A stretch of DNA of 63,190 bases, the filler included, from Octopus bimaculoides (taxonomy: Eukaryota): NCBI RefSeq assembly GCF_001194135.2. It is 3 parts of 3 records of this genome, joined end to end, with 100 filler letters (N's around TTAATTAATTAA, not from the genome) between each part and the next. Parts side by side here need not be neighbours in the genome. Positions count along the whole stretch, not along the records: positions 49,964 to 63,190 come from NC_068991.1; 2 more parts are not named here. One strand, written 5' to 3'. Numbering within the stretch: position 1 is the first letter of the stretch; every line of letters begins with the position of its first letter. The position numbers and the translations under genes were made by a program. This document shows, one piece after another, positions 50,214 through 52,685 of the stretch. A model generated the notes under the pieces. That model worked only from the letters and a program-made list of their open reading frames with translations. It searched no databases and was not told the origin of the DNA.

Positions 50214-50459
50214 TTAGATTGAGAATGGAACAAAATAAAGTTTGTATGTATAAAATATACAATTTACATTAAGAGATACACATTTGAAATTGGTTTCTTG
50301 CACAACCAATTGGTCTAGTGCACAACCATTTCTACTATGCCAGTACCTTTGGAATATTCTGAAAGAATAACGACAGAAAGAACTCATACATACCTCCAGC
50401 TTCATCTCCTTCTTTGAAGCTACTTGACAAACAATCCGTACCATTTCCTCTTCTCCATG
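50214..50459 (-). CDS. Candidate downstream/terminal exon of the cystatin-like gene
   Basis: Strong acceptor ttttcttttattttatacttttAG at 50460-61; either a 66-nt exon ending at a GTATGT donor (50394) or an open phase-0 frame HGEEEMVRIVCQV...CRYSFRIFQRYW...FKC to 50214. Confidence 0.4.
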   Translation of the reverse strand, partial: HGEEEMVRIVCQVASKKEMKLEVCMSSFCRYSFRIFQRYWHSRNGCALDQLVVQETNFKCVSLNVNCIFYTYKLYFVPFSI

Positions 50460-50544
50460 CTAAAAGTATAAAATAAAAGAAAATTAAATAAACAATAATA
50501 GCAGACAATTTCCTGATATTAATCTTCTTTTGATTTTTAAGAAA

Positions 50545-50685
50545 ATTCTTACAATGATTTGGACGCAGTCCCACTGCATGGGACCTTGGGCAGGTGTCTT
50601 CTACTATAGCCCCAGGGCAACTAAAACATTGTGTGGAGATTTGTGTGATGGACACCAAAGAAGCCCACTGTGTGTGTGTGTTTCC
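50545..50685 (+). mobile_element. SINE family B, 5' fragment (intronic, antisense to the candidate gene)
   Basis: cagtcccactgcatgggaccttgggcaggtgtcttctactatagccc...aaagaagcccactgtgtgtg. Confidence 0.8.
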
Positions 50686-50703
50686 ATTACAGTGACTACT
50701 CAC

Positions 50704-50777
50704 TGTTGCAAATGCAAGTTGCAAATTGTCTGTGCAGCTTCATCAGGGTCTGTCCATTTGGTCATCCTCAAAGTAAA
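50704..50777 (-). CDS. Candidate 74-nt internal exon (FTLRMTKWTDPDEAAQTICNLHLQ)
   Basis: Branch-point-like CACTAAC, acceptor ttacttcaatcAG, donor caaca|GTGAGT; only one frame is open. Confidence 0.45.
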
Positions 50778-51269
50778 CTGATTGAAGTAAATTTTTGTTA
50801 GTTAGTGTTCTGTGGAAGATGGGAATGTTGTTATTTATAGGTATGTGCTGCTGACCTCAACTTCACCCCAGTTGCTGTTTGAAGTTAGGGCTCCATTTAG
50901 AATATGTCAAGATCAAGATTATTGTTTTTGTGAGGTAAAAAGCTTAAGGGAAGCCAACTTCTGAGTCAAAGTTCTTGTTACAGAGGTCACATCCAGAAGA
51001 TCAATGGACAAATCTGCTTATGATCTAATGAAACAATTCTCAACCTCTGGAAGAAACAGGATGAAAGCCCTAAAGGCAATATCAGAGACAACGATGACGA
51101 CGACGATAGAGAAGGTATTGATTTGGTATGCTGTTTGGAAAATACTGGCTAACTGTTACAGCTAACAGAATAAATTTTAGGCTTGACATGACAAATGTCT
51201 TTGGCGACATTCTGAGTAAAAAAATTCAGGTGATGAGCTATTCTCTTATCAGTATAAGCAACTACTGAT

Positions 51270-51480
51270 ATAGGCTAAAAGGGTGAATTGGTGAACCTGA
51301 ATATTCCTGGAAATAGATTCAGCTCTCTAGACTATACAGAGATGACAGGCCAGCAATCTTAAGCTACATAAATGATCACAGCTTAGAAACTGAAGAAAGA
51401 ATTCAATAGAATTAAAGAAATTCAATCTAAAAGTTATCATGGAAACTAACATAAGCACCATTAACTATTTTAGACTTGGT
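51270..51480 (+). mobile_element. Decayed Penelope RT fragment
   Basis: RLYRDDRPAI resembles the PLE catalytic GLYRDDGLA; followed by LKVIMETNISTINY..DL resembling LxITIETNxxxVNFLD. Confidence 0.6.
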
Positions 51481-52151
51481 AAGTAACATCCTTAAAGAAA
51501 ACCAAATGAAGATCTATGCTACACTAAAAGAAATTCTAACTACCCAACTGTAACAATACTATTAAAGAAATATAATTAGGAATATTAGTAAAAGAATATC
51601 CTTTATTGAAAATATATATTTAATCATACTGGTCATTGAGGAAATTAGGTAAGTGAATAAAATTTGGTGGAGTTAGTAACCTAACATATTGTAACCTCAC
51701 ATACTGCCTTGAGGAATGTACAAAAAAAAGAAACTTTTTCAGGTGAGCGAAGAAGTGAAAACATAACTTTAAATGTGTGTGTGTGTGTGTACACACAAGA
51801 TTCCAAGCCATGGATTGATGGCTACAAGTTCCTACTGCAATAAAAATTATCTTTGTCTTTACCTTTTCTACTACTGATAGGAACATGAACAATTGTTCAT
51901 TTAGGAGAGGGTAAGTTCTGATTTGAAACTTCTGCTACCTTGTGGCCAGACTCATCCACGAGAAAGACTGAGAGTCAACTCTAAGGATAACCAGAACCAG
52001 CCAGCTGGTCAGTCAGTCAGCCAGTCAGCCAGTCAGCCTTGTGAGTCAGCTAGCCAGCCAGACAAATAGGGAGAGAGAGGGGGAGAGGGAGAGGAAGAGA
52101 GATTAATAGTTCGATAGACAGACAGACAGACAGATAGATAGATAGACAGAC

Positions 52152-52197
<46 letters not shown>

Positions 52198-52469
52198 ATA
52201 GATAGTCAATAGACAGATATACACACATACAGACACACAAACACTAAAAAAAAACATATATGCACATATATACACATACATATCTATGTAACATTGGAAT
52301 AAAAGTTTTTGTAAGTAACCACTCATAATGAAAACATAAGGTGGTATCTTATCTCTGAAATATCATTGGAAAGAAGCAAACTTGCCATGTAAAAAAAAAG
52401 TTAACTAAACAATCAAAACAAAAATGGAAAAGTTATCTTCTAAAAGAATAACAAGAACGAAATACTGAC

Positions 52470-52685
52470 CCATTTTTGTGCTTCCACAACTGATGTAAGA
52501 TGGAGAGATGAATATGCATTATTCTTTATTGCACATGGACAAATAATATGAGAAACAGCATAATTAGCTGCTTTCTGGACAAAAGAAGTGTTCACATCTA
52601 AATTTTCAATCTTGGTCAACCCAAAGACACAAACAATAAGTAATGTGAGCAGTACTGGTTTTCCACACGTTGAGCAAGAATCCAT
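52470..52685 (-). CDS. Candidate first coding exon of a secreted cystatin-like protein (72 aa)
   Basis: MDSCSTCGKPVLLTLLIVCVFG (signal-like), LTKIENLDVNTSFVQKAANYAV (cystatin helix-like), LTSVVEAQKW then a phase-0 GTCAGT donor, the same position as intron 1 of type-2 cystatins (after ARKQ in CST3). Confidence 0.55.

What the first reader, a model, noticed from the sequence alone, without database searches (positions are those of the whole stretch)
50214..52685. Unannotated-looking secreted cystatin-like gene lacking the QxVxG inhibitory motif
Exon 1 has a signal-like segment, LDVNTSFVQKAANYAV and VVEAQKW ending at a phase-0 donor where type-2 cystatins split ARKQ|IVAG, plus an unusual CPC insert. 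Downstream minus-strand segments with strong splice sites (50777-50704; from 50459) encode cystatin-like strands (FTLRMTK...ICNLHL; RIVCQV...CRYSFRIFQRYW, where YW would replace PW). No VVAG is visible, although 51875-51800 (VVEKVKTKIIFIAVGTC) may be a diverged version. It could be a non-inhibitory cystatin-fold protein (as in cathelin or latexin-like proteins) or a pseudogene. The exon chain is unresolved: joining 72 aa + 74 nt + 50459 gives ...LQHMEKRKWYGLFVK*.
Basis: partly seen in the sequence, partly recalled or inferred. Interest (0 to 1): 0.7.

Follow-up and report, generated by a model that had tools for sequence, protein, structure and literature searches.

The report
Diverged two-domain octopus cystatin-like gene
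The flagged stretch holds the first two exons of a real, already annotated but uncharacterised Octopus bimaculoides gene for a secreted protein made of two very diverged cystatin-like units whose classic protease-binding motifs are largely lost; it is a modest curiosity, not a new kind of system.

Summary
The piece matches Octopus bimaculoides chromosome CM046611.1 at 100%. So is the exon start at 50459, but that exon ends at 50394. The two join directly and in frame (…EAQKW|HGEEEMVRIVCQVASKKEMKLE|). They are exons 1 and 2 of RefSeq gene LOC106870522 (XP_014772135.2, "uncharacterized protein", 236 aa, 5 exons). Exons 3-5 lie beyond the piece's edge.

All three are disrupted or not alignable in O. 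sinensis.

All five exons are intact in O. sinensis and O. vulgaris. Exons are 96-100% identical against 83-92% for introns, and dN/dS is 0.34.

The protein has two tandem units:
- **Unit 2 (outside the window)** is a significant cystatin homologue: hhalign P=2.7e-6, 22.7 bits against a type-2 cystatin HMM, 0 of 3000 shuffles as good. It has KYEIG in place of QxVxG and keeps PW and the C-terminal disulfide.
- **Unit 1 (partly in the window)** is only marginally similar (p≈0.02-0.04). Its first intron nonetheless falls at the same column and phase as in a bird cystatin gene. It lacks both QxVxG and PW.

Pfam's threshold is not met and the structure models are of low confidence. Verdict: a divergent new member of the cystatin superfamily, of modest interest.

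The parts
52470..52685 (-). Coding part of exon 1 of LOC106870522, counted from the better-context ATG (gcaATGG). It encodes 72 aa: the signal peptide, then the N-terminal part of unit 1 (the LDVNTSFVQKAANYAVSH helix region, the CPC insert, NNAYSS, and the strand LHLTSVVEAQKW). It ends in phase 0.
   Evidence: translation. (100% match to XP_014772135.2 and to the O. bimaculoides chromosome). (GT donor conserved in O. sinensis). (in-register but weak alignment to type-2 cystatins).
52686..52721 (-). The 12 extra N-terminal codons (MYFYISVFLYFA) that the current RefSeq model includes by starting at an upstream in-frame ATG. The older model XP_014772135.1 starts at 52685.
   Evidence: Which ATG is used was not tested. 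Read directly from the sequence, the downstream ATG has a purine at -3 and G at +4.
52620..52685 (-). Predicted signal peptide MDSCSTCGKPVLLTLLIVCVFG. The inferred cleavage after VFG follows the -3/-1 rule.
   Evidence: One search shows it is the only strongly hydrophobic window in the protein (VLLTLLIVCVF, KD 3.35). Three N-x-S/T sequons lie downstream. No SignalP-type tool was available, so the cleavage site is inferred.
50460..52469 (-). Intron 1 (2010 nt, gt...ag).
50394..50459 (-). Exon 2 (66 nt, 22 aa, HGEEEMVRIVCQVASKKEMKLE), with phase 0 at both ends. Its position corresponds to the QxVxG loop plus the following strand of a cystatin. It is 100% identical at nucleotide level in O. sinensis.
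49964..50393 (-). Start of intron 2 (gtatgt donor). The gene continues beyond the piece's edge: exons 3-5 lie about 3.1, 6.5 and 15.6 kb downstream of the end of exon 2 in the chromosome record (L002 15397-15618, 18839-18907, 27936-28037).

Best explanation
The window holds exons 1 and 2 of a real five-exon protein-coding gene, conserved within the genus: Octopus bimaculoides LOC106870522. It encodes a secreted protein of about 200 residues after signal-peptide removal, built of two tandem, shortened, highly diverged type-2-cystatin-like units.

Each unit keeps the three-part exon layout of a type-2 cystatin gene:
- all introns are in phase 0;
- the first lies exactly at the Q of QxVxG;
- the second lies just before the Cys of the last hairpin;
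- the exon-3 part of unit 1 is fused to the exon-1 part of unit 2.

Each unit keeps the C-terminal hairpin disulfide and has lost the loop that carries the other disulfide.

The papain-binding wedge is eroded. Unit 1, whose first two-thirds are in the window, reads W-H-G-E-E where QxVxG should be and T-E where PW should be. Unit 2 reads K-Y-E-I-G and keeps PW.

Inferred mechanism, not shown: the protein is secreted. Unit 1 cannot act as a canonical papain-family (C1) inhibitor. Unit 2 may retain weakened binding through Gly and PW. The protein therefore most likely acts as a cystatin-fold binding protein or an inhibitor with altered specificity. One concrete possibility is legumain-type inhibition through the Asn that unit 1 retains in NNAYSS, which aligns with SNDKYSS of chicken cystatin.
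For: Identity and gene model:
- The piece is 100% identical to GCA_001194135.2 CM046611.1.
- Exon 1 plus exon 2 match XP_014772135.2 exactly.
- There are five exons with canonical GT-AG sites, all in phase 0, conserved in O. sinensis.
- All five exons are intact in O. vulgaris.

Constraint:
- Exons are 96-100% identical against 83-92% for aligned intron.
- dN=0.023, dS=0.067, ratio 0.34, from 12 nonsynonymous and 9 synonymous changes; binomial P=0.019 against neutrality.

Cystatin relationship of unit 2:
- The only PDB sequence hits are chicken cystatin, E=0.006.
- hhalign against 16 type-2 cystatins gives probability 88.6%, P=2.7e-6, over 67 columns. These include KYEIG<->QLVSG and C...PW...C.
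- A local HMM gives 22.7 bits, with 0 of 3000 shuffles as good.
- Smith-Waterman against chicken cystatin: 0 of 2000 shuffles as good.
- The only Pfam family listed for the whole protein is PF00031.
- Foldseek of the (low-confidence) full-length model ranks cystatin C, chicken cystatin, fetuin-B, multicystatin and phytocystatins first, E about 0.01-0.1.

Unit 1:
- Both hhalign and HMMER independently give the same in-register alignment of the helix region and strand.
- Shuffle p is about 0.02 for the window-encoded part and about 0.04 for the whole unit.
- Extending that alignment by one residue puts the exon-1 end on the Q column, where the guinea-fowl cystatin gene has its phase-0 intron: SAKRQ|LVSGI.
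- Exon 2 (22 aa) and exon 4 (23 aa) are equivalent in size and phase.

Secretion: a single hydrophobic N-terminal core and three N-glycosylation sequons.
Against: - Pfam PF00031 reaches only 11.4 bits, E=0.4, against a cut-off of 22.2. It was not listed at all for the O. sinensis protein.
- Exon 1 alone hits no cystatin in 1.84 billion proteins, in PDB or in Pfam.
- Unit 1 against the cystatin profile is not significant (hhalign P=0.14).
- Units 1 and 2 show no detectable similarity to each other.
- The AlphaFold2 models are of low confidence: mean pLDDT 38 for the full length and 50 for unit 1 alone. The unit-1-only model has a non-cystatin topology and Foldseek gives only noise for it.
- No Foldseek hit reaches E<=0.001.
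- No transcript, proteomic or literature evidence could be obtained.
- Homologues were found only in three Octopus species, so the constraint estimate rests on 21 substitutions.
Confidence: 0.7

Rival explanations
1. Only the C-terminal unit (exons 3-5, outside the window) derives from a cystatin. The window-encoded N-terminal part (exons 1-2 plus the start of exon 3) is an unrelated, lineage-specific leader or domain, and its resemblance to the cystatin helix and strand is chance.
For: - Unit 1 against the cystatin profile gives P=0.14.
- Its HMM score is only 3-4 bits, with 2-4% of shuffles as good.
- It shows no similarity to unit 2.
- The unit-1-only AlphaFold2 model has a different topology, and Foldseek finds no cystatin.
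- The C-terminal hairpin of unit 1 against that of chicken cystatin is not significant.
Against: - Two methods give the same in-register alignment.
- That alignment places the exon-1 boundary exactly on the conserved phase-0 intron column of type-2 cystatin genes.
- Exon 2 mirrors exon 4 in length and phase.
- Unit 1 has a Cys...Cys hairpin with the same spacing as the cystatin C-terminal disulfide, and its third part begins Y..(E)CTF like the bird exon 3, YTTCTF.
- Tandem duplication is the usual origin of multi-cystatin proteins (established knowledge).
Confidence: 0.22
2. The locus is a decaying or never-functional gene model: an ab initio prediction or a pseudogene whose open frame survives by recency.
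For: - No transcript or protein evidence was obtainable here.
- The RefSeq model was revised between versions. The older 319-aa version ran into retroelement sequence.
- The O. vulgaris model uses a different first exon.
- The locus sits among transposon remnants.
- Long open frames are common in this piece.
Against: - Five exons with intact frames and canonical splice sites are present in three species.
- Exons are clearly more conserved than introns, and exon 2 is 100% identical.
- dN/dS is 0.34, P=0.019.
- Read-through frames beyond the exon ends are interrupted in the sister species, while the exons are not.
Confidence: 0.07

Closest known systems
Type-2 (family 2) cystatins, e.g. chicken egg-white cystatin and human cystatin C (Pfam PF00031, MEROPS I25B)
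   Same: - It has a secretory signal.
- Each unit has a helix-then-strands order.
- The exon layout has phase-0 introns at the Q of QxVxG and just before the last hairpin.
- The C-terminal hairpin disulfide is present in both units.
- Unit 2 keeps the Gly of the first loop and the PW of the second, and it aligns significantly.
   Different: - It has two tandem units instead of one.
- QxVxG is degenerate (WHGEE in unit 1, KYEIG in unit 2).
- Unit 1 has no PW.
- No alignable N-terminal Gly is present.
- The loop carrying the first disulfide is deleted: 16 columns, and a middle exon of 22-23 aa against 38 aa.
- Unit 1 has a CPC insert after the helix.
- The score is below Pfam's threshold.
Tandem-cystatin (type-3-like) plasma proteins: fetuin-A/B, histidine-rich glycoprotein, kininogens; and plant or fluke multicystatins
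   Same: - These are secreted proteins made of several cystatin-fold units in a row.
- In fetuins and HRG the papain-binding motifs are lost and the fold is reused for other partners; fetuin-B inhibits astacin/meprin metalloproteases (established knowledge).
- Fetuin-B and potato multicystatin appear among the Foldseek hits.
   Different: - No sequence-level relationship to these proteins was shown.
- The units here are much shorter and each has a single disulfide.
- There is no fetuin-type CPDCP linker. The CPC lies inside unit 1 after the helix, not between the units.
- Homologues were found only in Octopus.
Non-inhibitory or re-targeted single-domain cystatin relatives (CRES/cystatin 8 subgroup, cathelin domain, latexin)
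   Same: They have the cystatin fold with one or more of the three papain-binding elements missing. CRES and latexin are in the Foldseek list.
   Different: No specific sequence similarity to them was tested or seen. CRES proteins retain PW and both disulfides (from memory, not tested here).

Membership tests
Cystatin domain (Pfam PF00031) | Score at or above Pfam's gathering threshold (22.2 bits) | tested here: not met
   PF00031 is the only family listed for XP_014772135.2, but at 11.4 bits, E=0.4, residues 165-195; not listed for exon 1 alone or for the O. sinensis protein.
Cystatin superfamily (homology) | Significant profile or sequence similarity to bona fide cystatins: unit 2 (outside the window) | tested here: met
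   hhalign probability 88.6%, P=2.7e-6, 67 columns; 22.7 bits, 0 of 3000 shuffles as good; chicken cystatin is the only PDB hit, E=0.006.
Cystatin superfamily (homology) | Significant profile or sequence similarity to bona fide cystatins: unit 1 (window-encoded) | tested here: inconclusive
   P=0.14, in register; 4.1 bits, 64 of 3000 shuffles as good. Smith-Waterman, 88 of 2000 shuffles as good; no cystatin found with exon 1 alone.
Type-2 cystatins | QxVxG first hairpin loop | tested here: not met
   Aligned positions read W-H-G-E-E in unit 1 and K-Y-E-I-G in unit 2, where only the Gly is kept.
Type-2 cystatins | PW in the second hairpin loop | tested here: inconclusive
   Unit 2 has ...ILYEPWRYN, aligned to ...VYSIPWLNQ. 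By Cys spacing, unit 1 has ...NIYTETNF at the equivalent place, so no PW (read from the sequence).
Type-2 cystatins | Conserved Gly in the N-terminal trunk | tested here: not met
   No Gly lies between the predicted signal cleavage site and the helix of unit 1 (LTKIENLDVNTSF), nor in the linker before unit 2 (KSKKIPAPSISVKRHEIQSL). Read from the sequence.
Type-2 cystatins | Two disulfides in the C-terminal half | tested here: inconclusive
   The last-hairpin pair is present in both units (C..19..C and C..21..C, against C..20..C in chicken). The first pair is absent because its loop is deleted (16-column gap). Actual bonding cannot be tested here.
Type-2 cystatins | N-terminal secretory signal | tested here: met
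   a single hydrophobic core, VLLTLLIVCVF, at residues 11-21, followed by the small residues V-F-G. This is a heuristic only; no SignalP was run.
Type-2 cystatin genes | Three-exon unit with phase-0 introns after the Q of QxVxG and before the last hairpin | tested here: met
   the guinea-fowl gene splits SAKRQ|LVSGI and PEMAK|YTTCT, both in phase 0; the octopus gene splits AQKW|HGEE, MKLE|YGHEC, AYKK|YEIG and RQKP|IHCMT, all in phase 0. The first introns fall on the same alignment column; the second fall within one codon.
Cystatin fold | A helix packed across a five-stranded antiparallel sheet | tested here: inconclusive
   the full-length model has pLDDT 38. Unit 2 reaches 50-65 and shows a helix plus four strands; the top Foldseek hits are cystatins, but E is 0.01 or worse; the unit-1-only model has pLDDT 50, a different topology and no cystatin hits.
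Cystatins (function) | Tight reversible inhibition of papain-family cysteine proteases (or legumain via the Asn of SND) | not testable with these tools
   Needs recombinant protein and enzyme assays. Unit 1 keeps an Asn aligned to the SND Asn; unit 2 does not.
Fetuin / type-3 tandem cystatins | Tandem cystatin units; in fetuin-B a CPDCP linker motif between the units | tested here: inconclusive
   The tandem arrangement is met. No CPDCP is present; there is only a CPC inside unit 1. No specific sequence similarity to fetuins was tested. Fetuin-B hits in Foldseek have an rmsd of about 15 A.

The most novel reading that the evidence does not exclude
An Octopus-restricted secreted tandem cystatin has remodelled both papain-binding wedges and been re-targeted. 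Unit 1 might act on legumain-type asparaginyl endopeptidases through its retained Asn (NNAYSS). Alternatively, as with fetuin-B, the scaffold with its Cys-Pro-Cys insert might block a metalloprotease or bind a non-protease ligand. It would then be an independent invertebrate example of a cystatin fold recruited to a new target.
Probability: 0.15. Interest if true: 0.5.

Novelty: new member of a known kind. Interest (0 to 1): 0.3.

Why it matters
RefSeq labels the gene "uncharacterized" and records no domain for it. Linking it to the cystatin superfamily gives it a testable biochemical hypothesis. It also adds a lineage-restricted, fast-evolving tandem cystatin to the cephalopod repertoire. Such proteins are candidates for saliva, mucus, haemolymph or digestive-tract biology, where protease control matters. 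The case also shows that intron position and phase can carry homology information after the sequence signal has almost vanished. Beyond that it is ordinary: divergent, non-canonical and multi-domain cystatins are well known.

Tried and rejected
1. Exon 1 alone found no cystatin in any search:
   - Pfam: no cystatin.
   - PDB sequences: no hit.
   - The word-index protein search: no candidate. This is a tool limitation with a short query, since XP_014772135.2 contains the peptide exactly.
2. The exhaustive HMMER search of 1.84 billion representatives with exon 1 gave only the O. sinensis orthologue. That hit unlocked the gene model, but it showed no remote homologues.
4. The O. vulgaris alternative first exon (window 57142-56985) was rejected. 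It is frameshifted here and lies antisense in a transposon ORF, while the genuine exon 1 is intact in O. vulgaris.
5. AlphaFold2 on the full length and on unit 1 alone gave low confidence. The unit-1 model yielded no meaningful Foldseek match.
6. Similarity between units 1 and 2 was tested by BLASTP, hhalign and Smith-Waterman. None was found.
7. The last homologue search, with chicken cystatin as query, returned only bird and crocodilian cystatins. The family profile used (A2) is therefore narrow.
8. Literature searches for the locus or accession ids and for octopus or cephalopod cystatins found nothing relevant.
9. tRNA and Rfam scans of the piece were empty.
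Full report
**What is in the sequence**

On the minus strand an ATG at 52685 opens MDSCSTCGKPVLLTLLIVCVFGLTKIENLDVNTSFVQKAANYAVSHIICPCAIKNNAYSSLHLTSVVEAQKW. This ends at 52470 in phase 0 and is followed by gtcagt.

A 98-codon open stretch is not itself unusual here. The AT-rich 13-kb piece has 11 N-free open stretches of that length or more. The case therefore rests on comparative evidence, not on length.

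**Where it comes from and what the gene is**

Exon 1 alone matched nothing in Pfam, in PDB sequences or in the word-index protein search.

An exhaustive HMMER search of 1.84 billion representative proteins gave exactly one hit. It is a 236-aa protein, 96% identical over all 72 residues, namely O. sinensis XP_036362888.1, "uncharacterized protein LOC118765248".

Its 90%-identity cluster also contains O. bimaculoides XP_014772135.2 (LOC106870522, 236 aa) and an older 319-aa version of that model. An O. vulgaris model (CAI9730178.1) shares everything except the first exon.

The piece is 100% identical to O. bimaculoides chromosome CM046611.1, and XP_014772135.2 matches the window's exons exactly. 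The gene is therefore annotated, but without a name or a recorded domain.

**Exon chain**

Mapping the protein on the chromosome locus gives five exons with canonical splice sites, all introns in phase 0:

| Exon | Location | Last/first residues at junction |
|---|---|---|
| 1 | window 52721/52685-52470 | …AQKW\| |
| 2 | window 50459-50394 | \|HGEEEMVRIVCQVASKKEMKLE\| |
| 3 | outside the piece | \|YGHEC…AYKK\| |
| 4 | outside the piece | \|YEIGV…RQKP\| |
| 5 | outside the piece | \|IHCMT…NFLF* |

Only exons 1 and 2 are in the piece. Exon 3 begins about 3.1 kb downstream of the end of exon 2, which is about 2.6 kb beyond the edge at 49964.

- The 74-nt segment 50777-50704 is not a multiple of three. 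It is in no gene model, and its 3' end cannot be aligned in O. sinensis.
- The segment 51875-51800 has a 13-nt deletion in O. sinensis.
- The continuation past 50394 ("…CRYSFRIFQRYW") is interrupted by stop codons in O. sinensis and O. vulgaris.

**Is the gene real?**

- All five exons, with their splice sites, are intact in O. sinensis and in the O. vulgaris genome.
- O. vulgaris has an intact exon 1 even though its model does not use it. That model's alternative first exon lies antisense in a transposon ORF and is frameshifted in the window.
- Exons are 96-100% identical between O. bimaculoides and O. sinensis, and exon 2 is 100% identical. Aligned intron is 83-92% identical.
- dN=0.023 and dS=0.067, a ratio of 0.34, from 12 nonsynonymous and 9 synonymous changes. 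The binomial P against neutrality is 0.019.

This supports a functional gene under moderate constraint. I could obtain no transcript evidence.

**Is it cystatin-like?**

The protein divides into two units, numbered here as in the 236-aa RefSeq protein: unit 1 is about residues 36-140 and unit 2 about 141-236.

*Unit 2, which lies outside the window, is convincingly related to type-2 cystatins:*
- Its only PDB sequence hits are chicken cystatin entries, E=0.006.
- hhalign against an alignment of 16 type-2 cystatins gives probability 88.6% and P=2.7e-6 over 67 columns.
- A local HMM of that alignment scores it at 22.7 bits, with 0 of 3000 shuffles as good.
- Smith-Waterman against chicken cystatin beats all 2000 shuffles.
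- The alignment pairs KYEIG with QLVSG and HCMTVILYEPW…C with TCTFVVYSIPW…C. It also shows a 16-column deletion of the loop that carries the first disulfide.
- PF00031 is the only Pfam family reported for the whole protein, but it is far below threshold at 11.4 against 22.2 bits.

*Structure prediction gives weak support for unit 2.* An AlphaFold2 model made from four near-identical sequences is poor (mean pLDDT 38; unit 2 reaches 50-65). It still shows a helix plus four strands in unit 2. Its top Foldseek matches in PDB are almost all cystatin-fold proteins: cystatin C, chicken cystatin, sialostatin, fetuin-B, multicystatin, phytocystatins and CRES. None is better than E=0.01.

*Unit 1, the part the window encodes, has much weaker evidence:*
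LDVNTSFVQKAANYAVSH pairs with VDENDEGLQRALQFAMAEY, NNAYSS with NDKYSS, and VVEAQK with VISAKR.
- The scores are only P=0.14 for hhalign and 4.1 bits for HMMER. Shuffle p is about 0.02 for the window part and about 0.04 for the whole unit.
- Units 1 and 2 show no similarity to each other.
- A unit-1-only AlphaFold2 model (pLDDT 50) has a different topology and gives no cystatin match.

*What lifts unit 1 above chance is gene structure.* I mapped a bird type-2 cystatin gene (guinea fowl). It has three exons with two phase-0 introns, at SAKRQ|LVSGI and PEMAK|YTTCT.
- In the independent sequence alignments, the octopus introns AQKW|HGEE (unit 1) and AYKK|YEIG (unit 2) fall on exactly that Q column.
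- The second introns, MKLE|YGHEC and RQKP|IHC, lie within one codon of the bird position.
- The middle exons of the two units are 22 and 23 codons long.
- Both units have a Cys…Cys hairpin with cystatin-like spacing.

I therefore read the protein as a tandem duplication of a shortened type-2 cystatin unit in which the intron between the units was lost. I give about 0.55-0.6 that unit 1 is cystatin-derived and about 0.85 that unit 2 is.

**How it probably works (inferred)**

The N-terminus has a single hydrophobic core followed by V-F-G, and the mature protein has three N-x-S/T sequons. These fit secretion.

The canonical inhibitory wedge of cystatins is made of the N-terminal Gly, QxVxG and PW. 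In unit 1 none of the three is present. In unit 2 only the loop Gly and PW remain.

Unit 1 is therefore very unlikely to inhibit papain-family enzymes in the canonical way. Unit 2 might do so weakly.

Unit 1 keeps an Asn aligned with the Asn of the SND site. In cystatins C, E/M and F that site inhibits legumain (established knowledge, recalled from memory, not tested). This is the most concrete alternative activity to assay.

The CPC insert after the unit-1 helix has no counterpart in the cystatins compared. It differs from fetuin-B's CPDCP linker in both sequence and position.

**Comparison and novelty**

The closest known relatives are type-2 cystatins, by homology and exon layout. In architecture and motif loss it resembles tandem or non-inhibitory cystatin-fold proteins such as fetuins, HRG, multicystatins and CRES.

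It fails Pfam's threshold and lacks QxVxG. I therefore file it as a divergent member of the superfamily, not as a canonical type-2 cystatin. Homologues were detected only in three Octopus species, though the searches could not reach unannotated genomes.

The finding is of modest interest. It gives a domain assignment and a testable hypothesis for an uncharacterised gene. It is not a new kind of system.

**Limits**

- The cystatin profile is narrow, built from birds, a crocodilian and human cystatin C.
The chicken sequence proved 100% identical to database entries.
- There is no SignalP result, no RNA-seq and no deep alignment.

Noticed in passing
window 52897-53155 (runs into the N gap at 53156): A SINE-like dispersed repeat sits about 180 bp upstream of the gene's annotated start and is preceded by (ATC)n. 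Several copies at 76-85% identity occur elsewhere in the O. sinensis locus. A fragment of another dispersed repeat lies inside intron 1 at 50566-50679.
   Followed up: partly
window 56423-58400, + strand; 57142-56985, - strand: Broken transposon ORFs with a sub-threshold DUF6589 match, E=1.7e-4. They are syntenic and about 89% identical in O. sinensis. The O. vulgaris gene model CAI9730178.1 takes its first exon from the antisense strand of this element. That exon is frameshifted in O. bimaculoides, so that 5' exon is probably a prediction artefact.
   Followed up: partly
window ~62190-63190, + strand: A Tc1/mariner-type transposase pseudogene: HTH_Tnp_Tc3_2 at E=9.5e-14, with the reading continuing through frameshifts and a stop to the piece's end. 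The orthologous O. sinensis copy lacks exactly window 62210-62966, so it carries an internal deletion. A further transposase-like ORF at 60799-61107 had no Pfam match.
   Followed up: partly
window 53554-54420 and 59988-60412: An AT-rich dispersed repeat with (TAA)n tracts has more than ten partial copies in the 38.7-kb O. sinensis locus.
   Followed up: no
window 55029-55140: A GC-rich tandem repeat of GCCACC/CCGCCACCG type reads as poly-Gly/Ser on the minus strand. It stands out against the 30-40% GC background.
   Followed up: no
This is somewhat above the ~90% of the surrounding intron. The alignment then breaks before the putative donor. It could be noise, or a conserved intronic element or poison exon.
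   Followed up: partly
O. bimaculoides protein XP_014772135.1 (P0004): The older 319-aa RefSeq version of this gene's product replaces the last residues with a retroelement RNase H/RT-like tail (…LDIILATDASD…).
   Followed up: no
exon 1 peptide, tool behaviour: The word-index homologue search with the 72-aa peptide reported no candidate, although database proteins contain it exactly or at 96%. Negative results from that tool with short queries should not be trusted.
   Followed up: yes
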